A DNA stretch of 64,000 bases from NCBI RefSeq assembly GCF_021869535.1, contig NW_026262734.1:41726001-41790000 (forward strand). Direction: 5' to 3'. Within the stretch, counting starts at the first letter, position 1; each line of letters starts with the position of its first letter. The DNA comes from Mytilus californianus (lineage: Eukaryota). The notes under the pieces are model-generated. The model searched no databases, was not told the DNA's origin, and saw nothing but the letters and a program-made list of their open reading frames with translations. Shown here one piece after another: positions 1 to 30,455 of this stretch. Position numbers and translations under genes: made by a program.

Positions 1-318
1 ATCCCTTTGTGGTATGGAAACTTGTGGTATAATTTCAGAGAGATCCATACACCGTTCCACAAGTTATTATCTGGAAACTAGAAAAATGCTTATTTGGGCC
101 CCTTTTTGGCCCCTAATTCCTAAACTGTTAGGACTATAACCACCAAAATCAATCCCAACCTTCCTTTTGTGGTTATAAACCTTTTGTTTAAATTTCATAG
201 ATTTCTATTTACATTTACTTAAGTTATCGTGCGGAAACCACGTCTTCTGACGACGCTGATGACGACGAGGAGGTGATACCAGTATATGACTGCAAAATTT
301 TTTGCGGTCATATAAAAA
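1..318 (+). mobile_element. 3' part of a Helentron-associated (HINE/pearl-like) element, family A
   Basis: GACGAC microsatellite, 3' hairpin and TTTGCGGTCATATAAAAA end, shared with the copies ending at 16548, 21386 and 33047. Confidence 0.7.
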
Positions 319-485
319 TTAATAGTAATACATCATCAGATCTTGTTTTTACTTGTTGTAACACATGTATAATTGAGCTTATTTTTGGATGTGTTTGTGC
401 TTTATAGTCAATTTTAATGGAAATATTCCCTTCTAATTTCTACTCCAGAAATTTTGAAACTTGTCAACAATTTGTGGTTACTTAC

Positions 486-563
486 TACAAACATACACTG
501 TTGATGCAACAGATGCCCAGTCTTCCCTGTCTGTTATCTTATGTCTGTCTGCTTCTATTGTTA
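486..563 (-). CDS. TPCN1: TPCN1 exon ([25 protein letters not shown])
   Basis: cttacag|TA...A|gtaagt; 78 nt, phase 1/1; position fits the S1-S2 loop and start of S2 in domain II; sequence similarity weak. Confidence 0.72.
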
Positions 564-12500: not shown

Positions 12501-15500
12501 TTTTCGTGGATTATTGATTTCATGGTTTTGCAAAAGTTTGCATACAAGCCTACAGCAAATCTGTACTTTGTTGGAAAAATTAAATTGGCTGTTAACCTAT
12601 GCCCAGGAAATCCACAAAAATTGGTTTCCCACGAATAATAATGGATCCCAATAGATTAATTAATGATTGTCCTTACAATGAAGTACAGACATACAGACTA
12701 AAAAGTGGTCATCTGTCATTTTCATTTTGTCCCACTAATTGCAATGACTGACAATCAATTAGCCCAGTAAGAAATATTTCAACGGATTTCAATTTTTAGC
12801 ACAACATGACTAGATAACAAATTGATGTATGAACAAACAAACAGATGAAAATAAACCTATATTCCCCAGTCACAAACATTGCAGGGAGTAAGACTTTTAG
12901 ATTGATTGATTGATTTTTTGTGTTTAATGCCACTTTTAGCACTCTTTATTATATGATGACTGCCAGTTTTGTATGGTGGAAGAAGCATGAGAGAACCATT
13001 AATTTAGATAGAAAAACAAACAATCCTAGTCAATTAAGATTTAGTAAAACACATTTGCAACATGTGGGGTTCAAAACTCACAAACTTAGTGTTGACAGGC
13101 TACTTAGACCACTTGCCTTTCGAGGCCAAACCAGGACTTACCTCCTTAGTTACCAGCAATCTGAAGGCGTGTTGACAGCCAAGTCTCTTGTGGAAAAATA
13201 ATTTCTTTACTTTTGTCTTTTCCAAATTTGAAAATGTATCATAAACTACGGCGAGAAACTAAAAAACAAAAATAAATGTAAAATATACTTTTATAGAAAT
13301 GTGTAAATTATTTCTAATCAATCTCCTTTTTTTCTTTCACTTTTCCTTTTTTTTCCATAAGAAAATATAAAAGCTTGTAAGTTCAAAACATGACATATTA
13401 AACCATAAAAAGCACTTATATAACTGATTTTTTTTTTAGTAGCTTAATAATTCAGTTACTATTCTATATTTCTTCATACAAAATGTGGTTGGATAAACTC
13501 TTTTCTCCAAAAAAATTTAAAATACAGCATTTAATACAGAATAGAAATTTATGTTTATTAAAGCAGGTGAGAGATTTGTTTTAAATTCTAACAGATATTT
13601 CTTTTGTCATCTACTTACTTTTTTATTGTTGTAATCATATACTATTGATCTTCTTCTTATAAAACACTCTTTTGTATTTTCAATATTAATGGTTTTTTTT
13701 CTTTTTGGTCATTGATATTTGAAGATATATCACAGAGCTATTCCATTAATGTGATTAAATTGAATAAGGGGAGGTTGCAAGGGAATGTTTTATTTTTGGA
13801 CATCGGTTGAAGGTTATTTATGGTTCTGTGTCCTTTCGATGTATGGATAATTACTTAATACAAAGTAACTTGGTTGTGGGTGGAATTTTTAAATCCCTTT
13901 ACCCTCCAACATCCATTATAATAGAAAAGCCCTCTAGTGGCAATATGTAAAACCACGTATAATAAAAAGGTTGTGTAAATTTAATGCACTTTAATATTAC
14001 TAACCAGATTCATTATAAAATAAAGTTCTAGAGACAGGTAAATAATGTAGAAAATACTGTAGTATCGTGAACTGGCATAAGCTGGCATCATTACATCTGG
14101 ATAACTGAAGAAAAATAAAATATAAATACTGGGGATTAATTATTTATCATGGGTAATCAATTGTCTTGGATTTCCAAATATAGATGAACCAAATTTGTGA
14201 GTTCAAGGATGTACAAATTTTCGATAGACTTGAATGCAGACTTAGGCAAAACAACGAAATCAAATATAAACAAAAATACAATGTTTCATAAATCCATGAA
14301 AATTGATAACCATGAAAATAAATGATTCCACAGTGGTATAAAGATGACAAAAAAGCTGTATTCATTAAAAAAAATTGAAAACAAGACTTTACACCTTATT
14401 GTGCTAAGCTAACCCCACTCATAATTCAAAGTATTGAAAAAAAAGAAGGTAGGTGTCTGACAGATCCAAACGTTACAACTCATCATCATCAAGCTACTCA
14501 TCTAATATGCAGTCATTCTGTTCAGTAGTATCTGAGATAAGTGTTAGGACAAATGGACAAACAGGCTGACAAGGTGAATACAATAAAAGCCCCCACTCCT
14601 AAAATAGGGGTATTTTATAAATAAATAAAATGCTCCGCAGGGCGCAGCTTGATACGACCGCAGAGGTCGAACCCTGAACAGTTGGGGCAAGTATGGACAC
14701 AACATTCAAGCTTGATACAGCTCTGAATTTGGATTGTGATTAAATATTTGACACAGCATAGGTTTCTGACACAGAATGAATGTGGTCTAAGAACTTAAAA
14801 ATTTTAAATTGGACATTCACCTATTATGGTCCAATATCCAAAATCTAAATACATGGTTAGATTCAGCATATCAAAGAACCCCAAGAATTCAATTTTTGAT
14901 GAAATCAAACAAAGTTTAATTTTGGACCCTTTTGACCTCAATGTGGACAAAGTTGATAACGGGGCACAAAAATCAAAAATCTAAATACATGGTTAGATTC
15001 AGCATATCGAAGAACCCCATATATTCAATTTTTATTGAAATCAAACAAAGTTTAATTTTGGACCCCGATTTGGACCAACTTGAAAACTGGGCGCATAATC
15101 AAAAATCTAAATACATGTTTAGATTCAGCATATCAAAGAACCCTAAAAATTCAATTTTTGTTAAAATCAAACTAAGTTTAATTTTGGACCCTTTGGACCT
15201 TAATGTAGACCAATTTGAAAACGGAACCAAAAATTAAGAATCTAAATACACGGTTAGATTCGGCATATCAAAGAACCCCAATAATTCAATTTTGATGAAA
15301 TCAAACAAAAGTAAATTTTGGACCCTTTGGACCTCAATGTGGACCAATTTAAAAACGGGGCCCAAAATCCAAAAACTTAATACATGATTAGATTCAGCAT
15401 ATTAAAGAACCCCAAGAATTCAAGAATAAAACCCCATTGAAATTGATCAAGAAATAAGCAATTTATACGAAGTATCTTCTTTTGCACAATACTGTGCAAT

Positions 15501-18500
15501 TGAATATTTCTTGCTATTGCGCAATACTGTACAATTGACAATTTCTTGCTATTGCGCAATATAGTGCTATTGGATATTTCTTGCTATTGTGCAATACTGT
15601 GCAATTGAAGATTTCTTGCTATTGCGCAATACTGTGCAATTGAAGATTTCTTGCTATTGTGCAATACTGTGCAATTGAAAATTTCTTGCTATTGCACAAT
15701 ACTTATTATGTAATAATTTACACATCCTGTTTGGTGTGTATCTCCTACCATATCATTATTATTTACTTTTAAATATTAATCAGAAATAACCAACTTAAAA
15801 TGGAAAATTTTAAAAGAAAAAAAAAATCCCCCCCCCCCCAAATTTTTTGAACCCCCTTATGATTCATCACCCCCAAACTCAATCCCAGCCTTCCCTTTGT
15901 GGTATGGTACCTTGCAGTACAATTTCAGAGAGATCCATACACTTGAACACAAGTTATTGTCTGGAAACTAGAAAAATGCTTACTTTTGGCCCCTTTTTGG
16001 CCCCCAATTCCTAAACGTTTCGGGCAATTACCCCTAAACTCAATTCCAGCTTTCCCTTTGTGATATGGAACCTTGTAGTACAATTTCAGAAATATCCAAA
16101 CACTTACACACAAGTTATTGTCATGAAACTAGAAAAATGCTTGTTTTTTGCCCCTTTTTTGGCCCCTAATTCCTAAAATTTTGAGGCAATTACCCCCAAA
16201 ATCAATTACAGCCTTCCCTTTGTGATATGGAACCTTGTGGTACAATGTCAGAGAGATCCATACACTTACACACAAGTTATTGTCTGGAAGTTACAAAAAT
16301 GCTTATTTTTGGCCCCTTTTTGGCCCCTAATTCCTTAACTGTTGGTATCATAACCCCCAAAATCAATCCCAACCTTCCTTTCGTGGTATTGAACCTCATG
16401 GTAAAATTTCATGGAGATCCATTCACTTAAACTAAAGTTAGAGTGCGAAAACCAATGTGTCTTCGGACGACGCCAGACGACGACGACGACGCCAACGTCA
16501 TACCAATATACGACCAAAAAATTTTTAATTTTTGCGGTCATATAAAAATACCTTAGGTTTGATGTTTGAATAACATAATTATTCAAGTTCACAGTTTTTA
16601 ACCCTTGAGTTTGGAAAATAATAACATGAGAATGTGCGATCAGACAATGTGTCTGACACAAGTGGAAAATAAAACAATGGTGATCCAACCATCAAGAACA
16701 CTTATAAACTTAGTTTTCCTGTACAAATATAATGAAATAAAACTTTTAAAAATTACAAGTTTCCACTTATTGTATAATAGTATAATATATATTGTGTGAT
16801 CATACCGTTTTTTTTTTTTATAGAACATTTTTTTGAACTTTTCTTGATACTAAAGTGAAGGTGTCTTGTAATGCACTTTTTTAAATGTAATTTTCATATG
16901 ACTACTAAATATTAAACGGTTCAAAACAGTTTGAATTTGAGCTCCATACTTGTTCTATTTTTACGAACTTACTTTGCAGTAGTCAAAAGAACAAACAGAC
17001 TAATAAAACTGTCTTGCAGTGTGGCAAAATACTGAAATATAAACAGTTTTGTTATTTAAAAAGAATTAAATCTTCAAAAAGGGAACTAAATTAAGTTTTG
17101 GCTTATAGAATATTGCTTTTCATGTATTTTTAAGATATTAAATTTCATATATTCTATGTGTGACAAGATTCATTGAAATTTTGGAAAATATACCAATTAT
17201 TGCAATTATAAACATTTTATATTATACTTGCAAGAATTTTCTAAGTGTAATGTTCTGTTAAATCCAAATAAATAGAAAATAAATTTTTGGACAAATTCTA
17301 AGATGAATTGAGTCTTAATTTCACTAAAATCTGAAGTTTGAATTAAATGCATGTATTCCCTTTCTGAAATTCAAAAATTCGTAAGGTATCTGCAGAACCC
17401 AGTGTCTCGCCTACTTTTTATTGTTAGTCGCAAAAAATCACAGAGTGAATTTTTGTGGACGCCGCCGACGATGACGGAATGTAGGATCGCTATGTCTCGC
17501 TTTTGCGACAAAAGTCTCAGGCTTGACAAAAAACATTATTGCGGCACTATTTGAATTATTGACATCATACAACAATCACTTCTTATTGCTATTTGGGAAT
17601 CTGTGACACTTGATACGAGAGTTTGAGACACTTGATACAAGAATTTGAAACACTTGATACGAGAATTTGAGACACTTAATACAAGAATTTGAGACACTTT
17701 TTGAACTATTGACATCAAACAACAATCACTTTACTTTTGAGGCGCCATGCAATCATTGTCTCCTGTGATGTCAAAATGTTAGGGAATGGCTGTAATGTCC
17801 AGTTATGAAGGACATATAGCGATAAGGTCTTCCGAAATTATGTGGTAACATACAAGTTTTGGTTAGGTAGATTATAATTGAGTGCAAATAGCATGGACAA
17901 GTAATTATTTTCAAATTGATATTTTGTGTTTAACTTGTAGATATAAAGCCCTGCTTATGTGTAATAACATGTATTTTTAATGAATTACTCATAAACTTTA
18001 AACAAAAGTTTATAGTCTATACAATTAAAACGAACAGAAATACTTAAATACCTATAAATAACATTATATTCATACTTACTGCATCCCCATGAATCCCAGA
18101 AAATAAATAAAACCCTACAATTAAACCACATGTATAAAATATTAACATTAACATTAATTTTCATATCATTACTTGATGAATAATTAATATTTTGTTTGTT
18201 TCATATCAATGGTCTCCATTTATTCTCTAATGTAAATAGCAATATGTAAGATTGAACTTTTTTAAGACGTGTAATGATGTGTTTAAAGTAAATTTTTCTG
18301 AAAGTGTTTTGACTGATTCCATAGTCGATACATAGTACAATATAGCTGTAAACTAAATTTCATTTATTTCTTGCTGCCATCGGATCATCCTAAACCATCA
18401 CCTCACACACTCCAAGCACCTCAATATTTTAATATTTGATTCATAAACATCCCAGTTATAAAATGTTCATGCAAGAATTATGAAATTATTTATGAAAATT

Positions 18501-21500
18501 AACTGAAAATTGGAAATGTTTCTGGTTTTTTTTTAAGAATATACCACATATGCATTGAATTTTCTTGTCTAAATTTGACCTATGTACACATTTGCTGCTT
18601 CTATTACGTCATTCGGTCTCTGCTTGAAAGTTGTTTCATTGGTCGTCATACCACATCTCCTCAATTTAATATCAATTTGTTTGTTCATTGTTATTATGTT
18701 GTTTTTGCTTCTGTACTACCCTCTTACTTCTTTATTTTAATCAGATAAAAATTTTCAATTTCAATAAGACATTAAATCAAATTGGGTTCAAAAGGCTTAC
18801 CTAATATAGAAAATATCAACATGAAAAACAGTAACAACAACAGCATGTCTATAATAGGTGGCATGGACTGTAAAATCTGTCGGAATGTTCTGCAAACGAA
18901 ATATATAGTTACAGATATTAAGTGTGGAATCTAAACATGACAAAAAGTTAAAACAGGTGTTAAAGACTGAAAAAATTAGTTAAAATTTTCTTGAATTTAC
19001 AGCAAGAGGCTCCAAGGAGCCTTTATTGCTCACCTGGCTTTTCTGCATAAGATTAATACAATGTTACAAGAATATTTGTATTAAATAGTAACTGTGGGTG
19101 ACAAAATCTTGTCTGACTGAGCTTTTTTGTCTATCTATTGTAGTTTTCAAGATAATAGCATGTATAGGTAATAAACTGTTGACACAGAGATATGTCTCTC
19201 GTTTTGTAATTTTGATGGTTTAATGCAAATATTGATTAAAATGGCAATATTTAAACATGTAACTATGCAAATCATTCAAATTCAATGAATCGTGACTGAA
19301 AGTGCAGGGCCAAATAACGTCCATGGAAATGTGAAATGCCAATGTAAAACTGCGTACCAAATACCATTGACTTATCATATTAAGTGGTTTCCTTAGAACT
19401 AACCTAAACATGAACTTTAACTTGTAAACTATGTAAAATTTTCAAAGTCAATGAACCATGATTATGAGGTTGGACCATATCATCTCCATGGAAATGAGAC
19501 TTTCAAATGCCAATACAACTGTATACTCAATATCATTGTCACCTTAAACTGATCTAATATCAAACACTAACATGTAAATAATGCAAAACATTCAAAGTCA
19601 ATGAACCCTGACTGAAGGTAGGAGCCAAACAATATCCATGGTAATGAGATGTGTCAAATGATTATACAACTGCATACTAAATATCATTGACCTACCACTA
19701 ATGGTTCCCCTTAAACTGACCTAATCACAAATTAATACATGTAAACTAAGAAAAAGTTATCAGCAGACAGACAACAGACACCAACTGATGATAATAGCTC
19801 ATACAGGCCCTTTTGGCCATGCATGGGTTTTAATAAAATATTAAATAATAACAGCCTTAGACTGTAAATGTGAAATGAAAATCCATGAAATGAATTTTTT
19901 AAACACTTAGCTATTACATCATTTTAAAATAGTTAAAATTCAATCAACTTCCTTAAGTAACAAGATGCTTCCTGTTACTCATGAGAAACTAAATCATTTC
20001 AAGTTCTCAAGTGCTTCTTGATGGGGTATATTGTTGCATAAATCTTAAAACACTTGAAGCAGATGTAAAATCTTTAAAATAATTAAATAGGTAGTAGGAC
20101 TAGTAAACTCTACTTAATTCTTATTCTAAAAAATTTCCGCTTCAAAGTTATGTTTGCAGCTGTGAAATCATAAATTCTGTAACCAAGATTTAAGATTGTA
20201 AGTCTATGTACTAAACTCTAACTGATGTTAAACTTTATGAATTTTATATCCTGTGGCAAAGCCAATGAACCATGAAACATAGGTAATGTGACCATCATCT
20301 TATAGCAAGTGGTAGGTCTCTCCAATATGCCTCAGCACACAATATTATACTGCAGTATGGTTATTATATTTTTAGGAATGGCTAGGAGGTAGAAGCCGGT
20401 GAATTCCAATAGTTCCCCATAACTTCTTTTCTATGCATGCTATAATTGGAAATAAAATGCTCCGTGGGGCAGCTAGATACGACCGCAGAGGTCGAACCCT
20501 GGACACAGCATAGGTTTCTGTCACAGCATGAATGTGGTCAAAGAACTGAAAATTTTGAAATTGGATTTTACCTATTATGGTCCAATATCCAAAATCTAAA
20601 TACATAGTTAGATTCAGCATATGATCAAAAACCCCTTGAATTCAGTTTAATTTTGGACCCTTTGGACCCTAAGAATTCATTTTTTGATGAAATCAAACAA
20701 AGTTTAATTTTGGACCCTTTGGACCCTAATGTGGACCAATTTTAAAACCGGGCCCAAAATACAAAATCTAAATTACACGGTTAGATTCAGCATATCAAAG
20801 AACCCCAAGAATTCAATTTTTGTTGAAATCAAACAAAGTTTAATTTTGGAACCTTTGGAAATCAATGTGGACCAATTTAAAGACTGGGTTCAAAATCCAA
20901 AATCAAAATACACAGTTAGATTCAGCATAATAAAGAACCCCAAGAATTGAAGACTGAATTAAACCCCATTGAAATTTCTTAAGAAATAAGCAATTTATAT
21001 AAGGTATTAAAATAGTAATGGTTTTGGCCCCTTTTTCCCAAACATTTAGGGCCATAACCCCCAAAATCCAATCCCATCCTTCCTTTAGAGGCATGGAACC
21101 TTGTGGTACAATTTTATAGAGATCCATACACTTATACACAAGTTATTGTCCTAAAACAAGCAAAATGCTTGTTTTTGGCCCCTAATTCCTAAACTAGAAC
21201 AATAACCCCCAAAATCAATCCCAACCTTGTGGTATGGAACCTTGTAGTTCAATTTCATAGAGATCCATACACTTATAATCAAGTTATTGCCTGGAAAGCA
21301 AATGTCTTCGGACGACGAAGACGCTGACAACATGATAACATTATACAGTGTTATATGAACACAAAAATTTTGCGATCATATAAAAATAGCATCAGCGATT
21401 TGGTAAAATCTGACATATTGTCATACATTCCTTCAGACACCTCTACAGTAGTATGTATATATTAGAAACATTGGCTCAGCGATTTGGCAACTTTCAACAT

Positions 21501-24500
21501 TGACCTACATACTTTCTGGCCCGTCTATTAGAAACAATGGCCTCAGCGATTTGGTAACTTTTAACATATTGTCCTATATACTTTCTGACCTCTCTATTAG
21601 AAACAATGGCTCAGCAATTTGGCAACTTTCAACATATTGTCCTACATACTTTCTGACCCCTCTATTAGAAACAATGGCCTCAGAGATTTGGTAACTTTCA
21701 ATATATTGTCGTACATACTTTCTGACTCCTCTATTAGAAACAATGGCCTCAGAGATTTGGTAACTTTCAATATATTGTTGTACATACTTTCTGACTCCTC
21801 TATTAGAAACAATGGCCTCAGAGATTTGGTAAATTTCAATATATTGTCGTACATACTTTCCGACTTCTCTAATAGAAACAATGGCCTAAACAATTTGGTA
21901 AAATTAAAAAAATTATCAAACATACCTTCTGACCCCCCTGCAGTAATATGTATCTATTAGAAACAATGGCCTCAGTGATCTTGTGACTCTAAAATGGTTA
22001 TGCTGTCGTATAATCACAACTATAGTCTCTATGAATACGATGATCAAGGTACAGCTCTGAAAAATAACAATTACAATCAATTTTTCATAAAATTTGCATT
22101 TTATATGGAAAATTTCTATCATAATAAAATGCTCCAGCAACTGTTGTAAACAAAAAAGATCCTTTACAATTGGTCACATTAACAAGGAGAACTGTGATAT
22201 TTTATTTTAACAACTATGAGATGTATAGAAAATTTCAGAACTGAAACTGTTGATACAAGATCAAAGAGTTTGATTAAACATGAGGTAAAATGCTTAACAA
22301 TGCCTTAACTGAAAATCAGATTTTGAAATATTAGGCTACATTCCACTACTGTGGCTTCATTATCATTCTGGGGATACAAATTTTCATGGATTTTATGAGT
22401 ATTGGTTAACCACGAATTTAAATGCTTTTAAATTAAGTACAGATTGTCTGTAGGCTTGTATGCAGACTTTAGCAAATCAATAAAATAAATAATCCACAAA
22501 ATTACAATTTTTCCTTTATCCACAAGAATTGGTTTCCACAGTATTTTACTATTGGCATCATGATGGTAAACAACAAAATCATGAACTATATATTCATAAA
22601 TATCTGTATCATTATTAAACATTAATAAAAATAAATGGAGAATGTGTCCATGAGACAAAGATGATGCCCCCTGCTTGCATATAATGTTATAAAGGGACAC
22701 AACTCAAGAATGGTATGTGACGCAACCCAAATTCGAACTTGATCTGTGTTTTGTGGTAATAAGCATTGTGTATAAGTTTTTTAACATTTGGTTGAGGCAA
22801 ACTAAAGTTAAAGAATAGAAACTAATTTTGAGACATACAGATGGACAAGAGTAACACTTAATGCCCCCCTCCGCAGCGGCGGGGGCATACAAATTACTTG
22901 TTAGTCTGTAAATCATTATTGCTATTGATACACTATAAATCATTAATAAATATAAGTACCTTTATAAGAGTTCTTTTATGTTTGATGAATGTTCTGAATC
23001 CTAACCACTTCATCCGTATTCCTAATTCTAACGCTAATATCAAAAGTCCAAACAATTCCAGTGATCCATGAACCTGTATAATACATGTAATACAAGAAAA
23101 TATTTTATTCTTATCTTTATTGTATGTTTTCTAGGAGCCATCATCATTGCACGAAAATATTTCATAAACTGAGAACACTTAAATAAATGATTTAATTCAC
23201 TTACAGAAAAAGCAATCTGCATTTTTACAAGACATACAATGTAAATGATATTGTATTTTACTATCTTTTGGAAAAGACTTGATTTTCATTTGCTATCCTT
23301 ATAAAAAGATTTTGTTAGATCTGCAAATTATACATACAAACTTCTAACAAGTCTACATATTTCACTGTTCTTTTTCGATATAATTTACATTTAAAACCAA
23401 ATACTATATATTCAGAAATAAATGTGTCCATTTATCATGTTTATCTTTGCCAATCTGCGACTACTGCAAAAAATGTGAAATATAATTAATGTGATTGCTA
23501 AAATTTCATGAAGGAAAACCACTACTGAAAATACGAATGTGAGTTTTTATTAATGCAAATTAACTGCATAATTTTTTGCATTAATAAAAACCTTGCAATA
23601 ATTTATGAATTCACAGATAGGATTGAATTGTGTAAAGATATTTCTCTGGAACTAATACTATTAGGTAAAAACCTCAGTTACATGTAAGTGCAAGTCAAAT
23701 ATAAAATATAAGGGGCTCATTATCTGAAATATTAAGTATATTTATATTAAATTTATCATGTTTATAAGACAAGCAGACCTAAAAAAGGACCTTCTAAATC
23801 TGAAATGAATAAATGTATACTAGTTCAGTAAAATGGATACCACACTAAACTCTGAATCGGACAAATGAACCAAAATTAGAAAAAAACACACAAGACTAAC
23901 AAATTAAAGGCTAGAGGTTCTTGACTTGGGACAGGCGCAAAAATGTTGCAGGATTAAACATGTTTTGTGAGAACTCAACCCTACCCCTATACATTTACCC
24001 AATATGGATTATGTTTAGTAGTCATGGTAGTGACTACTTTAGATTGGTTGATTTTTTGTTTATAAATAGAAGGTTCAGTAGAAGTCTGTTGCTTTGATTG
24101 TGGAAAATTCTTGCCCAATATACCAGGTATATTGATAGACATTAACAATTACATGATTAACTTACCCCTACAGGAAAGAGACATTAACAATTACTTGATT
24201 ACTTAGCCCTACAGGTAGAGTTAAAAATGGTACTGCTGGTCTTTCACAGGCAACAATTAAAATTATTACTTACCCCTACAGGTAGAGTTAGAAATGGTAC
24301 TGCTGGTCGTTCACAGGCAGCTAATCCCATCACCAGCAGTGCTGCAAATAAGTCTAAAGCATAGAAAATTTTCTTGTGAGCAATTTTATAGGCTGGCAAA
24401 GCATTAAAGTCTCTGGGATGTGTACTGTATTTATCATTGTTTTCCCCTTCCTGCAGATAAATAGCTGCCTCTTGGTAATTCAGTTCCCAAGTTTTATACT

Positions 24501-24657
24501 GTTTATGTCGTCTGCTGATAGCATGGTATGGAGTGCCCTGGCCCTCCATAATCTGATGGGTAGATCCAAAACCATTGTTTACATCATAAATAGTCTCACC
24601 ATTACTGTGTACTCTGTTTGATGGAACATCGTAATGGTCTTCATCTGAAATAGACAT
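486..24657 (-). CDS. TPCN1: Two-pore calcium channel 1, 5' 14 coding exons (gene continues beyond window start)
   Basis: Hand-spliced minus-strand exons: 24657-24274, 23073-22960, 22056-21926, 18889-18801, 18114-18080, 17031-16973, 14104-14005, 13258-13142, 12332-12269, 11733-11624, 10297-10231, 4045-4001, 1697-1641, 563-486. All introns between them are GT..AG and the phases chain without stops. Peptides [50 protein letters not shown] and [12 protein letters not shown] match vertebrate TPC1 as I recall it. Confidence 0.96.
732..1388 (+). mobile_element. HINE-like element, family C
   Basis: GAGCCTGC/GCGAGAC ends, CCGTCGTCGG microsatellite, internal 170-bp repeats, terminal GGGTTCCGGAGAACCC hairpin; related copies at 17377-17532 (reverse) and 33136-35975. 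Confidence 0.68.
1641..1697 (-). CDS. TPCN1: TPCN1 exon, domain II S1 ([18 protein letters not shown])
   Basis: gttttag|AT...G|gtaggt; 57 nt, phase 1/1; aligns to YLVVAVNGVWILVET. Confidence 0.85.
1814..2462. mobile_element. Non-autonomous TIR element, CAG termini, 5-bp TSD (hAT5-like)
   Basis: Ends CAGCCCTCAA / TTGAGGGCTG; AACAA flanks both sides; GGTCGCC/GGTTGCC subterminal repeats; coding-like minus-strand ORF 1941-2174 inside. Confidence 0.7.
4001..4045 (-). CDS. TPCN1: TPCN1 45-nt exon ([14 protein letters not shown])
   Basis: attacag|GT...T|gtaagt; phase 1/1; aligns to TPC1 INILVKSKAFQYFM. Confidence 0.82.
4711..5640 (+). mobile_element. HINE-like element inserted in the 29-bp satellite (family A head, family F body)
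   Basis: Starts AATAAACTGCTTCGCTGGGCGCAGCTGGATACG; internal 150-bp repeats; (GACG/GACA) microsatellite; ends GTCCCGTTAACAGGGGTATAAAAA. Confidence 0.72.
5781..6566 (+). CDS. Tyrosine recombinase of a DIRS/Ngaro-type retroelement, 5'-truncated
   Basis: Frame is open from 5781 ([14 protein letters not shown]...RKRLPIT) into ORF 5946-6566. Catalytic R (FLRCGEF), HSFR, GRW and Y (YTRY) are all intact. No RT/RNaseH ORF upstream; satellite DNA abuts directly. Confidence 0.9.
   Translation, partial: TIKLYLCGIRFHFLKYGGFNPLISFGKPLECLKTILIGLKKKQGSTVKRKRLPITMSILSKMCKLLHTCIFGNFNSIMLEAACTTAFFGFLRCGEFTVMNQFDPECNLCCSDMQITADCIFVTLKKSKTDPFRQGITIPLYKTGYSICPVLSILKYNQLRQSVYSSNTEAFFISEDRKPLNRKFFISHVKILLDKLGLSSDSYNGHSFRIGAATSAQEARLEDHLIQTLGRWSSNCYTRYIHTSPNVLKNAQKQLAETDRS
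7600..8420 (+). repeat. Variant minisatellite, about 23 units of 34-39 bp, core TATCCATGCTGACGTATGG
   Basis: Conserved core with variable T-rich spacers; one block is duplicated (about 7745-7915 versus 7925-8060). Confidence 0.9.
9716..10056 (+). mobile_element. 3' part of HINE-like element, family F
   Basis: Highly similar to 5325-5640; ACGG/ACAG microsatellite; GTCCCGTAAACGGGCATATAAAAA end. Confidence 0.72.
10231..10297 (-). CDS. TPCN1: TPCN1 exon ([22 protein letters not shown])
   Basis: atttcag|TTA...T|gtaagt; 67 nt, phase 0/1. Confidence 0.85.
11036..11576. mobile_element. Composite unclassified insertion: 168-bp foldback palindrome plus TIR-bounded block
   Basis: 11036-11203 is a long imperfect inverted repeat; 11203-11576 is bounded by TATTCTAATGCAA / TTGCATTAGAATA. 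Confidence 0.6.
11624..11733 (-). CDS. TPCN1: TPCN1 linker exon ([12 protein letters not shown]...IDLQWM)
   Basis: ttgacag|GT...ATG|gtaagt; 110 nt, phase 1/0. Confidence 0.9.
12269..12332 (-). CDS. TPCN1: TPCN1 exon ([21 protein letters not shown])
   Basis: gttgtag|GAT...A|gtaagt; 64 nt, phase 0/1. Confidence 0.88.
13142..13258 (-). CDS. TPCN1: TPCN1 exon ([14 protein letters not shown]...LLVTKE)
   Basis: tttttag|TTT...GAG|gtaagt; 117 nt, phase 0/0. Confidence 0.93.
14005..14104 (-). CDS. TPCN1: TPCN1 exon (YPDVMMPAY...ELYFIMNL)
   Basis: tcttcag|T...CTG|gttagt; 100 nt, phase 2/0. Confidence 0.93.
14623..16548 (+). mobile_element. Full-length family A HINE-like element with three internal tandem modules
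   Basis: Subterminal GACCGCA / TGCGGTC inverted pair; about 120-bp repeats at 14830-15420, 35-bp repeats at 15490-15705 (TTCTTGCTATTGCGCAATACTGTGCAATTGAAGAT), about 150-bp repeats at 15880-16440, GAC microsatellite. Confidence 0.78.
16973..17031 (-). CDS. TPCN1: TPCN1 pore-helix exon ([19 protein letters not shown])
   Basis: atttcag|TAT...AA|gtaagt; 59 nt, phase 0/2; TTAN filter motif spans the junction. Confidence 0.93.
17580..17730. repeat. 21-bp tandem repeat (TTTGAGACACTTGATACAAGA)n, about 5 units
   Basis: Directly visible; bracketed by a duplicated TATTGACATCA.ACAACAATCACTT. Confidence 0.8.
18080..18114 (-). CDS. TPCN1: TPCN1 35-nt exon ([12 protein letters not shown])
   Basis: ttgtag|GG...GCA|gtaagt; phase 1/0; matches TPC1 GFYLFS. 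Confidence 0.88.
18801..18889 (-). CDS. TPCN1: TPCN1 exon ([29 protein letters not shown])
   Basis: tttgcag|A...G|gtaagc; 89 nt, phase 2/1. Confidence 0.93.
19000..19830 (+). mobile_element. Degenerate HINE-like element
   Basis: 5' GGCTCCAAGGAGCC hairpin and GCTCACCTGG; internal repeats CAAAGTCAATGAACC...CTCCATGG; CAGACAGAC microsatellite; 3' ATAGCTCA...GGCCC..GGCC. Confidence 0.55.
20452..21386 (+). mobile_element. Family A HINE-like element
   Basis: Same head, internal modules and tail as 14623-16548, with fewer repeat units. Confidence 0.75.
21387..21975 (-). repeat. 69-bp minisatellite derived from the TPCN1 exon/intron junction
   Basis: Plus-strand anchor TCTATTAGAAACAATGG recurs at 21524, 21593, 21661, 21730, 21799 and about 21868, and also lies inside the exon at about 21954. 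Confidence 0.92.
21926..22056 (-). CDS. TPCN1: TPCN1 exon encoding domain I S3-S4 (SCTLIIVF...[21 protein letters not shown])
   Basis: ttttcag|AGC...AG|gtatgt; 131 nt, phase 0/2. Confidence 0.93.
22625..22890 (-). mobile_element. Short family D HINE-like element (a related partial copy at about 3600-3870)
   Basis: Reverse complement of the 48147-49140 family: ATGCCCCCTCCGC..GCGG hairpin end and AATAAATGGAGAATGTGTCCATG end. Confidence 0.65.
22960..23073 (-). CDS. TPCN1: TPCN1 exon ([11 protein letters not shown]...KHKRTLIK)
   Basis: tatacag|GTT...AAG|gtactt; 114 nt, phase 0/0; matches TPC1 VHATLELF...HKRTMVK. Confidence 0.93.
24274..24657 (-). CDS. TPCN1: TPCN1 coding exon 1 (128 codons, MSISDEDH...FLTLPVG)
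   Basis: ORF 24244-24657 carries [20 protein letters not shown]; donor GGG|gtaagt after 24274, phase 0. Confidence 0.95.
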
Positions 24658-24687
24658 TGATAGCCTTAATTAATAATATCATTAATA

Positions 24688-26013
24688 TCTAAATAGTCTA
24701 TTTGCCAATTGGCGATTTAATCCTGTTATCAAAGAACCATTTGTTTCCCTTAGAAGGGACATACTTTTTAGTAACAATGAAGAGCATGCGCAAAAAGAGT
24801 AATTGTATCTGTGCTTTATGTGTTTTTTTCAGATCTTTTAATTACTTGACATCTTTTGTTGAGCTAAAAACTTTTGATAAGAATAGTTATTTTTTTTGTT
24901 AAAATGGTTCAAAAGGTCAATAAATCCCTTTTACCTTATCATGCTTTGCATGTGTTATAATAGAATCACATTGGTAATTGGCAAATAGACTATTGACGCC
25001 CCATGTGTAGTAGTCAGCTAGAAAGAAAAGCATATATATTCCAGATCTAATGATGTATTTGTTTATAGTGAAAATTATGGCTATTTACACCAGTACAAAA
25101 TTAATAATGTGGTATTGTTAAATACTGCATAGCAATATCTATCGTTTCTCAGGTCAATGTCAAGTTTTTGGGAGTTCTCAGGGAATCGTGGTACCCTCAA
25201 AATCAGAAAATCGCAGATTATCCCACAAGTTTATATTGCTTTGATGCTTAATTTTTAGTTTATTGATTAGTATTTTGTTGACAGTTGACTGGCTGTTTGT
25301 CTATTTCTTTTGATCGTGGGGTTGTATTTTTCGACTTGTCAGGTTTTTATTTACCACTAGTTCATATGGACTAATTTAACCCTTGTTATCTACTCAGAAT
25401 CTCACTCACACTCACAGCACTTGTTTTGGTTTTTTTTAATACAGTTATTAATAAGCGATGTCATCAGCCAGAATAAAAAGTCAACTTTAAGTGTTAAAAG
25501 GAGACATGAACATTAAAAATAAATACCTGAGGGTGAAAATCCATTTTCATTTCTGATTAAGAGAGGACTTTCAATATTACCCGCCATATTGTTTTCATTT
25601 TCGATGATAAATGATAAATATAGAGGATTACGAACGTATCATGTGAATTCCAAAAATATTCCGAACAAAGGTTATTTCCGCCTAAAAGTAGTTCCATAGC
25701 AATTCAGTAAAATCATGAGCGATAATTTTTGCATTATTTCCTCAAGAGACTGAAATCTTTTCTTACATTCAATATCTTTAAACTATTTTTTCTTTCTCTC
25801 ATGCTACTTTGTAAATTTACGCTATTCAATAAAGAGACACACAGAAATTTTATAAGTACTATTTGTTGCTAGGGAATGCGTATTAAACAAATTCAATGTA
25901 GAGCGGCTGCAAGACCGATAGAAAGTAAATTGGTAATGTTGACGATGTAAATTTGGAATTATTTACAAATAAGCCTACTCTGAACATTGTTATCGCTGTT
26001 ATATTGTTCGAAA
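24688..26013. promoter_or_regulatory. Candidate bidirectional promoter and 5'UTRs of TPCN1 and DRC10
   Basis: Lies between divergent ATGs. Putative TPCN1 untranslated exon donor (cag|gtattt after 25527) and acceptor (tttag, exon starting at 24688). YY1-type CCGCCATATT at about 25582. RFX X-box-like GTTCCATAGCAAT at 25691-25703 and GTTGCTAGGGAAT at 25865-25877. Confidence 0.6.
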
Positions 26014-26943
26014 ATGGCCACCACAGCAATGCGAACACAGACATTAACAGGTTCAATTGCCACGGAGCCAATTTTAAACATGAAACTAACGGTTCCTGTA
26101 CCTCCTCAAAAAGGAGCACCAGGGAAAATAAGAAACAGACTTCGTTTAGATCCAGCGAGGGCATTAGAACCTGCAAGAAAAAAAATAGCTACGGTTGAAG
26201 CGCAGCGTGTTATGTCAGTATTTGAGGATACAATACAAAAAATAGAAATTTCCTCCATGATCCCATATATTCTTGAAAATTTGGACAGATTTAGAATTAG
26301 CTTTGGTGCAGAGCTGTGCAGCTTGTTAGATAACCACAGTATAATAATCGGTAGCTACAATGAGATAAAAGAACAGCTTGACAGGCAAATGCAACGGAAT
26401 AGAATACGATCAGCCAGTTCTGTCAGAAGTGATGCATCACAAGATCAACAAAATGAGACTAATGAAACTCAACCTACTGAAGATGATGGAGATCAAGTTT
26501 CAAATTATGATGGTCAAAGTCCTCCACAGAGCCCTGTTAATAAGCCTCCATCCAGAGGTAGTAGTGCAAGCAGTCGAAGATCTAATCCTTCTGTTGCTAG
26601 TTTTGACAGTCAAACAGAACGTACAATGCGAAATTTGAGTCTTGTAGCTCAGCAACTTAGTTCTTCGTGCAAAAACATTCTCAGACAATTTCAGATAAAT
26701 GGGACTGCATTTAATTCTGTGAAGACCCACTTTCATGCACGACCTAAAGAGAGTACCCAGCTTTTATCTTACATGAATGATTTAAGAGATATCTTGCTAA
26801 ATAAACTGTTAACAACACCTGAAGAAGAGAAAGAACGAATGGCTTACATCCAGGAAGTTTCTGAAAGAGAGAGAAACAATGCTACTATTATTGCAAAGAT
26901 GGAAGAGGAACTTGACGCTGCAGTTGCAGATAAGGAAGAGGAG
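26014..26943 (+). CDS. DRC10: DRC10 coding exon 1 (310 codons)
   Basis: aaaATGG start; GAG|gtatta donor. Confidence 0.9.
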
Positions 26944-29900
26944 GTATTAAATATAAGCATGTTAAATTTCAATTGAATTTGTAAGACTTGACATATTTTG
27001 TTGACTCCAACACGTCAGTTTATTAATACATTGTAGATAGGCATTTATTAAGAGCACTGAACTGTTGTGTTTCAAATCATAATTGACCTCTCAATGTTCT
27101 CCAAGTTCTAAAGTGTTATACTACATGTATTAAATTTTAAAAGAATATTATTTGCAATGCTTTGTTTACAATGATATATATCTTACCTTTACAATGAAAA
27201 CCGAAAAAGGGAATCATCAAATTATATTGACTTTCAACAACAACCATATGATGTGACCACAAAATTGTAGATAAAAACAACACACAGTGACATACTTATT
27301 TATTTTAGTCAAGATCACCATGCAGTACAAATAGCTGAAGCAAAATATATTAAACATATAAATTTAATACTGCATGTACAATCATGTATCTACTTTTTAT
27401 TGTCAGTAGTAATGCAGGTTGGCCAGAAGTTCCATTTATTTCATATAACATTATTTTCATATATATATATGTATGTACATGTATGAATTTATTATGAAAG
27501 ATTGTATTAAACACATACAAATGTACAATTTATAACATAAAATACATAAGTTTTTATATATTAATTTTGTATTTATAAAGATTCTTCCTTTTTTTAGATG
27601 AAAAAGAAAAATGATGTAATAAAGAAGCTACAGACAGAGTTACAACAGATTATAAACTTTTCCAAAGAAAATATAGGAAGGATTAAGAATGAACAGGATA
27701 AACAAGAATCAGCTGATAAAAAGAACCATGAAGGAAAAGTACAAAGGCTTCAGAATGAAATAGTACAACTAAAAACCCAGCTTCAAAACCTTGTATTGGA
27801 GCATAGAGAAAAGGAACAAGATCTAAGAAGGGTAAAATATATATTGAAATTCTATCTCAAAATATTGTTTGTATTGACTGTGAATCAGGGTTCTCACTTA
27901 AAAAGCAAGTCCATGAGTCCTGGACTCATGAAAATCTGTCTGGTCTCATCACTTTCAAAATTGGTGAGTCCAAAGATGCATCGGGATTGAAAAATGTTGT
28001 TACAACTACAAACATGACAAATGTAAGCACAAATATAATTATTTTATGACAAAAGTTTAAAAATTATCTAAAGGTGATGTCATTTCCTTGCTCTTATATT
28101 ATGTCATGGGGACTGAAAGAATAAATGATATAACAATAAAATTTCATCTTCTCACTGTTTTAATAGACTTGCTTTGGCCAAAATTGACGAGTCCCTGGAC
28201 TTGCCTTAAAAAATTCTTAGTAACAACCCTGTGTGAATAAAATGAGATGTCAGGTAAACATGGTAAATATTCGTGAGATATCATCTCATATACACAACAT
28301 AAATTAAATTAAATGTTGTTGAACTAAGTCAGATTAATGAAAAATTTGATAATATCTATTTAAGAATTCAAAGTTTTACATTTTATATCATTTTATCTAT
28401 ATCTACATTGTTTTTATTGACTGGTTTATAAGAAAAATACATGATGACGTGCATCAGTTCATTAATTCAAACTGTCATTTAATCAATTACCCAAGAAAAA
28501 CCTGATTTTTGTTTAAATTCAGTTCTCCAAATTCAAAGATGACATTATGTTGTATGCATTGAATTTATTTGATTTTAACATAATATTGCAAAAAATGCAT
28601 ATATATTCAGATTTCTCATGATGTTGAATTCTCAGATTTAAAAATAAGGAGATGTGGTATGATTGCGAATGAGACAATTATAATCCATCAGAAACCAAAG
28701 AATGTGGATGTAAACAATTATAGGGCACTGTAAAGCCTATACTGTAGTAATTTATGATTTATGTAGTAATTTATCAGTATAAAAGGCTTTTGCATGTGAC
28801 ACAAAGAAAAAAAAACCATCAGCCAGATTAATGATATAAACAAAAAACAAATATGGCAGATAGAGAACAATAACAGCCACTAAATAACAGGCTCCTTAAT
28901 TTGGACTTGATTGTATTAATAATTGTACACGGCATTTTCCATAATAATGTACCTTAATTTCTGTATCACAAATTTCTCAAATTACAGTAATTATATTTTA
29001 TATTTTACAGATGAAGTTTAAGGTGGAGTCACAAGTTGAAGGTTTAATTCAGAAATATGATGGTGAAATGAATGAGAGACAGGTAATTTCATTGAATTAT
29101 CACACACATATAAAAATAAGATCAGGATATAGATGTGGTTATCTTAAACAATTAAAGTTGAAAATAAATCATCGGAGAATTTCATGGTAATTAAAAGTCT
29201 TCATAAAGTATGTTTAACACATTACATTCACCTAATTGCTATTAGGTAGAGTGTTGAAGATTGCATGGACAAGCTTGAATGCATTTCAAAGCAATGTAAA
29301 ATTATAAATAGATAAATTACAGATATGAACTCTCACAAAATTCTTATCAGAATAGACCTTAGTTGTTAATGAATAATGGGGAATCAGTTTAAAAAACTTT
29401 CTCAGTGGTAAATTTTTTCACTCTAGCCTGTGACAGTGAGTGATACACTCTGAACTCTGAATCCTTAAAATCAAACATTAAAATGTTGTAAATTCAAACC
29501 ATACTGTCTACTAAATTGATTAAGTGTCCTTTATTGAAGTCAAGAGAAAAGAAATACAGGTAGTGGGAACAACTTGTGTTCTAAGGAAATTTTAGTTTTT
29601 CATTTTGATCATGACATCATATTACCATAATATGACTGAAATACAGATCCTGTGTCCAAGCTTTGCTTACAAGGATCTGAAAAAGCTCTGTTCTACTTTC
29701 TGTTTTTATTAAGACCTTTTAGGATTCTCTGGTTTTATTGGATTCATATACACATGCACCTTCAAAAATTTGAAGGCTTAATTTTCATTGGCTGATGTTA
29801 TACTACCAGAACAGAAAGTAAAACGGAGTGTTGTCAGATCCTTGTAAGTGTAGCTTGGTCACATGATTTGTAATTTAATCAGATTGCAATGTTATCTAAT

Positions 29901-30455
29901 TTTGAAGGGGCATTTTCTTCACAGACTTCTATATTAATAAGCGATAAATTCACAATATTTTATTTTCACAACCAAATTCTTACTGTAAATAGATTTATAA
30001 AAACAGATTCTTATATTTCCAATTTAACAGTAGGAAAAAAGCACAATACAAACCCACTGTACATGTATTTAAAATCCTTCCAGCAATCAGAACAAACTAT
30101 ACTGATAATTGTCGTGTCATACATTTTTATCCTACACCTTATTGAACAGTGAAATAGGAGAACTCAACTTATTCTTATTTTTCAGGAGGAATATGAAGAA
30201 ATAGAAGCTGCATATAATGCCCAGAAGAAACAGTTAGATGAAGTGGAGGAAAGATTTAAAACTATGTCAGCTGAGTATGACCAGATTCAGGAGGAGAGGA
30301 GACTGGCTCGTGAGAAACGTGAAGCTGCTGAGCGTGAGATGGCTCTCATGGTCAAAGCTGCCACAACAATCCAAGCTTTCTGGAGATCATTCAAAGTCCG
30401 TAAAGCCCTTAAAGCAAGGAAGAAGAAAGGAGGTGGCAAGAAAGGAAAGAAATAG
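26014..30455 (+). CDS. DRC10: Dynein regulatory complex protein 10 (IQ domain-containing protein D), 4 coding exons, about 501 aa
   Basis: Exons 26014-26943, 27598-27831, 29011-29082 and 30186-30455, all phase 0 with GT-AG. Coiled-coil protein with a C-terminal IQ motif (AATTIQAFWRSFKVRK) and basic tail KKKGGGKKGKK; N-terminal RLDPARALEPARKK is typical of IQCD/DRC10. Confidence 0.92.
27598..27831 (+). CDS. DRC10: DRC10 exon 2 (MKKKNDVIKK...EQDLRR)
   Basis: tttttag|ATG...AGG|gtaaaa; 234 nt. Confidence 0.9.
27886..28231. mobile_element. MITE with CAGGGTT termini and 7-bp TSD (hATw-like)
   Basis: CAGGGTT...AACCCTG; TGTGAAT at 27879-27885 and 28232-28238; GCAAGTCCA/TGGACTTGC subterminal inverted motif. 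Confidence 0.72.
29011..29082 (+). CDS. DRC10: DRC10 exon 3 (MKFKVESQVEGLIQKYDGEMNERQ)
   Basis: tttacag|ATG...CAG|gtaatt; 72 nt. Confidence 0.9.
30186..30455 (+). CDS. DRC10: DRC10 terminal exon with IQ motif
   Basis: ttttcag|GAG...TAG; an AATAAA follows at about 30463. Confidence 0.92.
   Translation, partial: EEYEEIEAAYNAQKKQLDEVEERFKTMSAEYDQIQEERRLAREKREAAEREMALMVKAATTIQAFWRSFKVRKALKARKKKGGGKKGKK

What the first reader, a model, noticed from the sequence alone, without database searches (positions are those of the whole stretch)
24274..26943. TPCN1 and DRC10/IQCD are head-to-head, apparently as in human
Seen: divergent ATGs at 24657 (-) and 26014 (+), 1357 bp apart, with no TE recognised in the core interval despite heavy TE load on both sides. 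Recalled knowledge: human IQCD and TPCN1 are adjacent and divergent on 12q24. Inference: the pair may date from the bilaterian ancestor and be held by a shared promoter that couples an endolysosomal Na+/Ca2+ channel to a calmodulin-binding axonemal regulator.
Basis: partly seen in the sequence, partly recalled or inferred. Interest (0 to 1): 0.7.

Follow-up and report, generated by a model that had tools for sequence, protein, structure and literature searches.

The report
Ancient TPC1–DRC10 head-to-head gene pair
In this mussel genome the lysosomal channel gene TPC1 and the cilia gene DRC10 start back-to-back only about 430 bases apart, an arrangement kept in every bilaterian phylum I sampled (not cnidarians); it is a clear but ordinary-in-kind conserved bidirectional gene pair.

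Summary
RNA joints in four runs show that the ATG at 24657 lies inside TPC1 intron 1, in the 3' splice site. The true TPC1 start is ATG 25587 (-) on a short upstream exon (25527-25594) that encodes the conserved N-terminal ESPLL motif. The DRC10 start at 26014 (+) stands. Start-to-start distance is therefore 427 bp, not 1357. Transcript contig ends leave a gap of at most 313 bp, a compact bidirectional promoter.

Identities hold. Every TPC exon tested hits mouse TPC1 best; TPC2 and TPC3 score lower or are absent. DRC10 has DRC10_N and an IQ motif and matches human DRC10.

The same divergent pair lies upstream of DRC10 in chiton, abalone, annelid, brachiopod, nemertean, crinoid, priapulid and frog. 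ATG-ATG spacing is 447-572 bp in five of them. It is absent in Nematostella, a coral and a jellyfish. A bilaterian origin is well supported.

A 17-nt element (25858-25874), like an RFX half-site, sits 156-268 bp upstream of the DRC10 ATG in six lophotrochozoans.

Functional coupling of the two genes is untested. The human arrangement rests on memory, with frog, herring and cattle evidence in support. This is a new member of a known kind (conserved ancient 5'-5' pairs).

The parts
22960..23073 (-). TPC1 coding exon 3 (S1-S2 region); lower edge approximate
   Evidence: RNA joint 23073<-24274 (GT..AG on the minus strand); tblastn matches to TPC genes of other phyla
24274..24644 (-). TPC1 coding exon 2 (TPC1-specific N-terminal helix [15 protein letters not shown]... 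and start of S1)
   Evidence: Mouse TPC1 6c96 at E 7e-23, no TPC2/TPC3 hit; RNA joints on both sides; splice signals
24645..25526 (-).
   Evidence: Joint 24644->25527, ends CT..AC on +, seen in X21 raw reads and in X1, X2 and X10 contigs; sequence
24692..24994 (.). MITE-like element: 38-nt inverted termini around 227 nt, inside TPC1 intron 1
   Evidence: the repeat finder pair I1, 82% complementary; no other copy in the window; a contig of X1 matches up to 24878 and then diverges
25527..25594 (-). TPC1 exon 1: at least 7 nt of 5'UTR, then ATG at 25587-25585 and 20 codons (MAGNIESPLLIRNENGFSPS) encoding the conserved acidic-dileucine N-terminus
   Evidence: Contigs of X1, X2 and X10 and an X21 read; translation; the same N-terminal motif begins the annotated TPC genes of chiton, abalone, crinoid and frog
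25595..25907 (.). Gap between the outermost transcript ends of the two genes: core of the bidirectional promoter (313 bp, an upper bound)
   Evidence: TPC1 contigs end at 25594/25585; DRC10 contigs start at 25908/25911/25915; the stranded run X21 shows opposite read directions on the two sides
25858..25874 (+). Conserved 17-nt element ACTATTTGTTGCTAGGG (RFX half-site-like GTTGCTAG preceded by a T-rich forkhead/SOX-like core), 34 nt before the DRC10 transcript contig start and 156 nt before its ATG
   Evidence: Only hit (<=4 mismatches) in each 22-25 kb locus, same strand, 207-268 nt before the DRC10 ATG in Liolophura, Haliotis, Owenia, Lingula and Tubulanus; shared 9-mers in >=4 of 6 species: 2 observed against 0.01 expected
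25908..26943 (+). DRC10 exon 1 (5'UTR about 106 nt, ATG 26014, 310 codons, DRC10_N region)
27598..27831 (+). DRC10 exon 2
   Evidence: RNA joint 26943->27598 in all four runs; tblastn with P0002; donor
29011..29082 (+). DRC10 exon 3
   Evidence: The loose-end sequence after 27831 is found at 29011; tblastn
30186..30455 (+). DRC10 exon 4 with IQ motif and stop codon
   Evidence: tblastn 100% to P0002; Pfam IQ PF00612 at E 5.8e-7, above cut-off; acceptor and stop
11594..22173 (-). Further TPC1 exons of repeat I and the linker, lying within ORF pieces 21919-22173, 18775-18930, 13984-14139, 13103-13258 and 11594-11836; exact borders not mapped
   Evidence: PDB best hit is mouse TPC1 for 21919-22173 (4e-9), 13984-14139 (2e-8) and 11594-11836 (2e-3); Ion_trans for 18775-18930, below cut-off; tblastn to other phyla

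Best explanation
This is a Mytilus locus where TPC1 (minus strand) and DRC10/IQCD (plus strand) are transcribed divergently from one compact promoter region. The transcript ends are at most 313 bp apart and the start codons 427 bp apart. The arrangement is inherited from at least the last common ancestor of bilaterians. Its most likely reason for persistence is cis-regulatory constraint of the bidirectional-promoter type (inferred). The two core promoters are packed into a few hundred bases, so any rearrangement breakpoint between the genes would damage at least one of them. The DRC10 side carries a conserved 17-nt RFX-half-site-like element just upstream of its transcript start, as expected for a motile-cilia gene (function inferred). 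The TPC1 side begins with a short exon encoding the conserved N-terminal acidic-dileucine motif. Shown: anatomy, identities, orientation, phyletic spread, conserved spacing and the conserved element. Inferred: that the element binds RFX-type factors, and that promoter interdigitation rather than a functional partnership keeps the pair together.
For: Anatomy: splice joints and transcript ends from 4 runs, with the stranded run giving opposite read directions for the two genes; splice signals and translation.

Identity: TPC1 is the best PDB hit for 4 separate exons, with TPC2 and TPC3 lower or absent. DRC10 matches 8j07/9fqr DRC10 at 5e-17. Named DRC10 orthologues carry PF27661. The IQ motif is present.

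Synteny: a divergent Ion_trans gene of about 800 aa lies directly upstream of DRC10 in Liolophura, Haliotis, Owenia, Lingula, Tubulanus, Anneissia and Gastrophryne. In Priapulus an unnamed model there contains TPC1-like exons. The TPC1-specific exon was found by tblastn in 7 of those 8 loci. PDB confirms TPC1 for crinoid and frog. Those gene ranges run ATG to stop, giving ATG-ATG distances of 447, 464, 467, 517 and 572 bp against 427 here.

Outgroups: Nematostella and a coral have GPN-GTPase > DRC10 > Kir. Rhopilema has nothing within 10 kb. No TPC exon was found in these loci.

Conserved element.

Literature: the class of ancient 5'-5' pairs under cis-regulatory constraint is described in PMC3514665. 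Herring tpcn1 and iqcd lie about 9 kb apart (PMC7115899). In cattle both genes lie within 0.5 Mb of the same two BTA17 SNPs, with neighbours I recall from human 12q24 (PMC6125589).
Against: TSSs are inferred from assembled contig ends and sparse raw reads, not from CAGE; the true gap may be smaller.

No functional test of the promoter or of the 17-nt element was possible.

The element is only a half-site, not a canonical palindromic X-box. It was not found with <=4 mismatches in crinoid, priapulid, frog or cnidarians. The crinoid has a related ATTGTTGCTAAG in the opposite orientation.

ATG-ATG distances are larger in Owenia (3.6 kb), Priapulus (>=2.9 kb) and frog (6.2 kb), where 5' exons may be unannotated.

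A bird locus showed no TPC1 exon within 10 kb, in a fragmentary assembly with a partial model.

Small intergenic targets can also persist neutrally.
Confidence: 0.78

Rival explanations
1. Functional coupling: the shared promoter exists to co-express an endolysosomal/acrosomal Ca2+/Na+ channel with a calmodulin-binding axonemal regulator in sperm and ciliated cells, and selection for that co-expression keeps the pair together.
For: Both genes are transcribed in the same four libraries. The conserved RFX-like element lies in the shared interval, and such sites can act in either direction (general knowledge). TPC1 takes part in the mammalian acrosome reaction (PMC3952862). [quoted passage not shown] 2019, cited in PMC7115899).
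Against: The element sits 34 nt from the DRC10 transcript start but about 265 nt from the TPC1 end. The DRC10:TPC1 depth ratio ranges from about 2 to about 14 among runs (a poor measure). IQCD is named among the genes of the human motile-cilia transcriptional signature, and TPCN1 does not occur in that paper's main text (the full gene list was not checked). TPCN1 is broadly expressed in mammals (recalled).
Confidence: 0.15
2. Neutral persistence: the pair has survived only because a 0.3-0.6 kb gap is a tiny target for breakpoints, with no constraint beyond each gene's own promoter.
For: The very short spacing in most species. No sequence conservation across the interval apart from one 17-mer.
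Against: The pair is retained in 8 phyla of all three bilaterian superclades, while the other neighbours of DRC10 differ between lineages: MazG-like, Ank/SOCS, EF-hand or JmjC genes. The start-to-start spacing stays within 427-572 bp in six species of five phyla, which suggests the interval cannot expand freely. In practice this shades into the best explanation, since a break in the gap would hit a promoter.
Confidence: 0.07
3. One reading: TPC1 starts at ATG 24657 and the promoter interval is 1357 bp and TE-free.
For: An in-frame ATG with open frame exists at 24657.
Against: A spliced joint 24644->25527 is seen in four runs, and no contig reads through 24645. The upstream exon encodes an N-terminus conserved in chiton, abalone, crinoid and frog. 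The ATG is part of the acceptor's pyrimidine tract. A MITE-like element lies in the interval.
Confidence: 0.03

Closest known systems
Vertebrate TPCN1-IQCD (DRC10) neighbourhood (human 12q24.13, recalled; frog, herring, cattle)
   Same: Same two orthologous genes, adjacent. The frog locus shows the divergent 5'-5' orientation directly (with TPC1 confirmed). Herring tpcn1 and iqcd are about 9 kb apart on chr8. In cattle both genes lie within 0.5 Mb of the same two BTA17 SNPs, together with RITA1, DDX54, SLC8B1 and PLBD2.
   Different: ATG-ATG is 6.2 kb in frog against 427 bp here. The 17-nt element was not found in frog.
Conserved ancient microsyntenic pairs (CAMPs) of Irimia et al. 2012, e.g. 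HSPD1-HSPE1
   Same: An unrelated gene pair kept adjacent in 5'-5' orientation across metazoan phyla with a very short intergenic distance. The proposed cause is a shared or interleaved promoter.
   Different: HSPD1 and HSPE1 are functional partners that are strongly co-expressed and linked even outside animals. TPC1-DRC10 has no demonstrated partnership, is not linked in the three cnidarians sampled, and is not named in that paper's main text. The supplement was not available.
RFX (X-box) promoters of motile-cilia genes
   Same: A conserved GTTGCY-type site close upstream of the start of a dynein-regulatory-complex gene. IQCD belongs to the human motile-cilia signature together with FOXJ1.
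   Different: Only one half-site is conserved. The canonical palindrome GTTGCC-N(1-3)-GGCAAC scores 9 of 12 at best. The conserved 5' extension (AYTAWTT) is not part of the X-box. Binding is untested.

Membership tests
TPC1 (two-pore channel 1 orthologue) | Closer to TPC1 than to TPC2 or TPC3 | tested here: met
   Four exons were searched separately against PDB. Mouse TPC1 6c96 is always the best hit (7e-23, 4e-9, 2e-8, 2e-3). TPC2 and TPC3 appear for the pore exon only, and score lower.
TPC1 (two-pore channel 1 orthologue) | Two tandem 6-TM Ion_trans repeats | tested here: inconclusive
Exons of repeat I and the EF-hand-like linker are in the window. No exons of repeat II were recognised between 1 and 11500; they may lie beyond the window or be too short.
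TPC1 (two-pore channel 1 orthologue) | N-terminal acidic-dileucine motif | tested here: met
   Exon 1 encodes MAGNIESPLLIRN. The equivalent ESPLL/ESPLI/EPLLIL begins the annotated neighbours in chiton, abalone, crinoid and frog.
DRC10 / IQCD (N-DRC subunit 10) | DRC10_N domain and similarity to DRC10 chains in solved axonemes | tested here: met
   Human 8j07 DRC10 at 5e-17 and 9fqr at 1e-16. The 98%-identical Mytilus protein and more than 100 orthologues carry PF27661. The local Pfam copy lacks that model.
DRC10 / IQCD (N-DRC subunit 10) | C-terminal IQ calmodulin-binding motif | tested here: met
   PF00612 at E 5.8e-7, 29.2 bits against a cut-off of 20.3, in exon 4.
Bidirectional promoter pair | Divergent genes with TSSs less than 1 kb apart | tested here: met
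   Transcript ends at 25594 (-) and 25908 (+), with opposite read directions in the stranded run.
Bidirectional promoter pair | Correlated expression, or a shared element acting on both genes | tested here: inconclusive
   Both genes are present in all four runs, but the depth ratio varies about 2- to 14-fold and depth is a poor measure. There is no functional assay.
Conserved ancient microsyntenic pair | Linkage and orientation kept across distant phyla, absent or unconstrained in the outgroup | tested here: met
   Present in Mollusca (3 classes), Annelida, Brachiopoda, Nemertea, Priapulida, Echinodermata and Chordata. Absent in 3 cnidarians.
RFX X-box promoter | Palindromic GTNRCC-N(0-3)-RGYAAC site | tested here: not met
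   The best match is 9 of 12, in Mytilus and Haliotis only. Only the left half-site is conserved.
RFX X-box promoter | Bound and activated by RFX factors | not testable with these tools
   Needs ChIP, EMSA or a reporter assay.

The most novel reading that the evidence does not exclude
The pair is kept together because one RFX-type ciliary/sperm element drives both genes in flagellated cells, tying NAADP/TPC1 Ca2+ release from acidic stores (acrosome, endolysosomes) to calmodulin-dependent control of the nexin-dynein regulatory complex. This would be a bilaterian-wide, genomically hard-wired Ca2+ module for sperm or cilia.
Probability: 0.12. Interest if true: 0.75.

Novelty: new member of a known kind. 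Interest (0 to 1): 0.5.

Why it matters
The locus is a well-defined example of a gene pair whose head-to-head arrangement, and even its start-to-start spacing of roughly 0.45 kb, has survived since the bilaterian ancestor. It also carries a 17-nt promoter element alignable across four lophotrochozoan phyla, which is rare for invertebrate non-coding DNA.

It offers a small, testable model for how bidirectional promoters freeze gene order.

It corrects the 5' end of mussel TPC1, restoring the N-terminal dileucine motif.

It also raises a checkable question for the TPC/NAADP and cilia fields: whether TPC1 and DRC10, both reported in acrosome biology, share regulation.

No paper in the open library that names both genes discusses the pair. 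None pairs 'TPCN1' with 'bidirectional promoter'.

Tried and rejected
- Pfam on the two first-exon ORFs gave nothing useful, because the local Pfam copy lacks DRC10_N.
- A canonical X-box scan of six intergenic regions found only 9/12 matches in two species, so no conserved full palindrome.
- A MAFFT alignment of six ATG-to-ATG intervals showed no conserved block apart from the 17-mer, mis-aligned in two species.
- Rfam and tRNA scans of 23300-27000 found nothing.
- A self-BLAST of the interval against the window found no second copy of the MITE-like element, so its TE status is unproven. The findings index searched by sequence was blank, which means nothing.
- The bird locus (Centropus) had no TPC1 exon and no called gene within 10 kb upstream of a partial DRC10 model. 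This is inconclusive, not counted as absence.
- One Priapulus PDB query hit a stop codon and another was too short to score. I relied on tblastn alignments instead.
- I looked for a MazG-like gene downstream of DRC10 in the window, as seen in Haliotis and Lingula. No candidate ORF lies in 30.5-40.6 kb.
- The Irimia et al. supplement is not held, so I could not check whether the pair is already on their list.
- The large representative protein search and the structure tools were not used, because identities were already settled.
- The joined spliced proteins were never assembled or searched; exons were searched one by one by reference. No human contig was fetched. The window has no N.
Full report
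**What is in the window.** The window is from a Mytilus genome. The plus-strand ORF 26014-26943 is 98% identical to the protein annotated as dynein regulatory complex protein 10 in M. coruscus, and 94% to that of M. edulis. GC content is about 32% and there are no N runs.

**Identity of the plus-strand gene.** Exon 1 (310 codons) matches the DRC10 chains of solved axonemes, 8j07 at E 5e-17 and 9fqr at 1e-16. Its orthologues carry PF27661 DRC10_N, and many also carry an IQ motif. A 510-aa Mytilus transcript-derived protein maps to four coding exons:
- exon 1: 26014-26943
- exon 2: 27598-27831
- exon 3: 29011-29082
- exon 4: 30186-30452, followed by the stop codon

The last exon scores Pfam IQ at 5.8e-7, above the cut-off. 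The gene is DRC10/IQCD.

**Identity of the minus-strand gene.** The ORF piece 24277-24657 hits only mouse TPC1 (6c96) in the PDB, at E 7e-23. The match runs through the motif [19 protein letters not shown] and the start of S1. No TPC2, TPC3 or plant TPC1 chain scores. Three further exon pieces, each searched on its own, also have mouse TPC1 as best hit:
- 21919-22173: 4e-9, with no other hit
- 13984-14139: 2e-8, against 3e-5 for TPC2 and 5e-4 for TPC3
- 11594-11836: 2e-3, with no other TPC

One exon gives a sub-threshold Ion_trans match. I did not recognise exons of the second 6-TM repeat in 1-11500.

I laid one stranded raw-read RNA run and three contig runs on 22800-28000 (5201 letters). This gives a joint 24644->25527 that skips 882 nt with GT..AG on the minus strand. 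It is present in all four runs, and no contig reads through 24645. The ATG at 24657 sits in the acceptor tract ...ATGTCTATTTCAG| and is intronic.

The upstream exon (25527-25594) carries an ATG at 25587 in good context (AACAATATGGCG). It adds 20 codons, MAGNIESPLLIRNENGFSPS, in frame with exon 2. This N-terminus is conserved. The annotated neighbour genes begin MARIMESPLLIRN (chiton), MAEVFESPLIS (abalone), MAGTEDRELESPLLER (crinoid) and MAAKQEDDEPLLIL (frog). This is the acidic-dileucine type of motif known at the N-terminus of TPCs (recalled).

- The ATG-ATG distance is 427 bp, not 1357.
- TPC1 contigs end at 25594 or 25585.
- DRC10 contigs begin at 25908, 25911 or 25915.
- The promoter gap is at most 313 bp.
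- In the stranded run, reads on the two sides have opposite first-mate directions, as expected for divergent transcription.

It holds a 303-bp element with 38-nt inverted termini (24692-24994). This looks like a MITE, although no second copy is in the window.

**How old is the pair.** I used DRC10 orthologues found by the word search. For each I fetched the DRC10 locus with 10-kb flanks. The gene ranges in that index run from ATG to stop. A divergent Ion_trans gene of about 800 aa lies immediately upstream of DRC10 in these species:

| Species | Group | ATG-ATG distance |
|---|---|---|
| Liolophura | chiton | 447 bp |
| Haliotis | gastropod | 464 bp |
| Lingula | brachiopod | 467 bp |
| Tubulanus | nemertean | 517 bp |
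| Anneissia | crinoid | 572 bp |
| Owenia | annelid | 3.6 kb (5' end of the model doubtful) |
| Gastrophryne | frog | 6.2 kb |

In Priapulus the upstream divergent model has no Pfam hit on record. tblastn nevertheless finds TPC1-type exons in it, including ...FQEGETM*KFDAHP...LPAY... and the S1 start. The Mytilus TPC1-specific exon finds its counterpart in every bilaterian locus except Haliotis, where it must lie beyond 10 kb. For crinoid and frog the PDB search returns TPC1 as the only TPC hit, at 2e-22 and 9e-24.

In cnidarians DRC10 has other neighbours. Nematostella and a coral contig share the order GPN-loop GTPase > DRC10 > Kir channel. Rhopilema has no gene within 10 kb upstream. No TPC exon is detected in any of the three. 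A fragmentary bird locus was uninformative.

The literature adds two vertebrates. Herring tpcn1 and iqcd lie about 9 kb apart (PMC7115899). In cattle both genes lie within 0.5 Mb of the same two BTA17 SNPs, together with genes I recall as human 12q24 neighbours (PMC6125589). I did not inspect human sequence. That human IQCD and TPCN1 are adjacent and divergent is my recollection, consistent with the frog.

The inference that the pair dates from the bilaterian ancestor is thus well supported. All three bilaterian superclades and eight phyla carry it. Whether it is older and was lost in cnidarians needs non-bilaterian outgroups that I could not reach.

**The promoter.** A k-mer comparison covered the six short intervals (Mytilus, chiton, abalone, Lingula, Tubulanus, crinoid), each with 100 bp added on either side. 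It gave two 9-mers shared by at least four species, against 0.01 expected. They belong to one element, ACTATTTGTTGCTAGGG at 25858-25874.

With up to four mismatches this 17-mer occurs once per 22-25 kb locus in Liolophura, Haliotis, Owenia, Lingula and Tubulanus. It is always on the DRC10 strand, 207-268 nt before the DRC10 ATG; in Mytilus the distance is 156 nt. The consensus was seeded from three species. The three others are independent tests. With a background of about 1.7e-5 hits per position (11 hits in 656 kb of strand), three hits in such a window are expected with a probability of about 1e-6 to 1e-8 (my arithmetic).

In Mytilus the element ends 34 nt before the DRC10 transcript contig start. 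Its core, GTTGCTAG, is an RFX half-site as I recall it from X-box and RFX5-type motifs. The T-rich 5' part fits forkhead or SOX cores. A canonical palindromic X-box is not conserved. It is therefore best read as DRC10's ciliary promoter element. The crinoid has a related ATTGTTGCTAAG in inverted orientation nearer TPC1. Frog, priapulid and cnidarians show nothing at this threshold. No other block aligns across phyla. No RNA family or tRNA lies in the region.

**Mechanism and rivals.** The best-supported reading is an ancient bidirectional-promoter pair held by cis-regulatory constraint. Two core promoters are packed into about 0.3 kb, so that breakpoints and insertions are not tolerated. This would explain both the retention and the nearly constant spacing of 427-572 bp in six species of five phyla, while the other neighbours of DRC10 change from lineage to lineage. 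This is the class described by Irimia et al. 2012 (PMC3514665).

It is neither shown nor excluded. In favour:
- TPC1 acts in the acrosome reaction (PMC3952862).
- IQCD has been reported as an acrosomal protein (cited).

Against:
- The conserved element hugs the DRC10 start.
- Depth ratios vary 2- to 14-fold between runs (a poor measure).
- The text of the paper on the human motile-cilia signature names IQCD but never TPCN1.

**Novelty.** Only four open papers mention both genes, and none discusses the pair. None combines TPCN1 with 'bidirectional promoter'. The kind of feature is known, so this pair is a new, well-documented member. It may already sit in an unpublished-in-text list, because the supplement was not available.

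**Rules observed.** No human contig was fetched. There are no N stretches in the window.

Noticed in passing
window 24692-24994: A 303-bp element with 38-nt imperfect terminal inverted repeats (MITE-like) lies inside TPC1 intron 1. One RNA-like contig matches it up to 24878 and then diverges, which suggests other copies elsewhere in the genome.
   Followed up: partly
window 23496-23669 and 23844-24017: Short stretches (about 40 nt: 23571-23611 and 23863-23945) in TPC1 intron 2 have very high summed contig depth in RNA-like runs (X1 146 and 736; X10 133), with many loose ends. There is no Rfam or tRNA match. They are probably fragments of an abundant transcribed repeat.
   Followed up: partly
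L004 7180-5065 and 2593-727: The Lingula locus contains two near-identical sets of TPC1 exons (S1-S2 through S6 of repeat I) in tandem. This is either a partial gene duplication or an assembly artefact.
   Followed up: no
L002 18227-21911; L004 13183-14989: A MazG-like (dCTP pyrophosphatase-type) gene lies tail-to-tail downstream of DRC10 in both Haliotis and Lingula, a possible third member of the conserved block. No candidate ORF was seen in the Mytilus window at 30.5-40.6 kb.
   Followed up: partly
L006 and L007: The anthozoan microsynteny GPN-loop GTPase > DRC10 > Kir (IRK) channel, all on one strand, is shared by Nematostella and a coral contig from an ENA assembly.
   Followed up: no
alignment A1; window 26943/26944: The end of DRC10 exon 1 (...DKE(E/N)E|gt) is at the same position in cnidarian genomic ORFs and in molluscs. 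This large first coding exon and its intron position therefore predate the cnidarian-bilaterian split.
   Followed up: partly
L009 7097-7177 and 6999-7088: The Priapulus TPC1-like exon has an in-frame stop and a frame change between two halves, and the public model starts inside it. This could be a draft-assembly error or decay of the gene.
   Followed up: no
window 6815-7201 and 8689-9075: Two identical pairs of ORF pieces lie about 1.87 kb apart on the minus strand, a recent duplication or repeat inside the TPC1 gene body. The minisatellite frames at 21577-21953, next to the S4 exon, are also visible, as another note on this window says.
   Followed up: no
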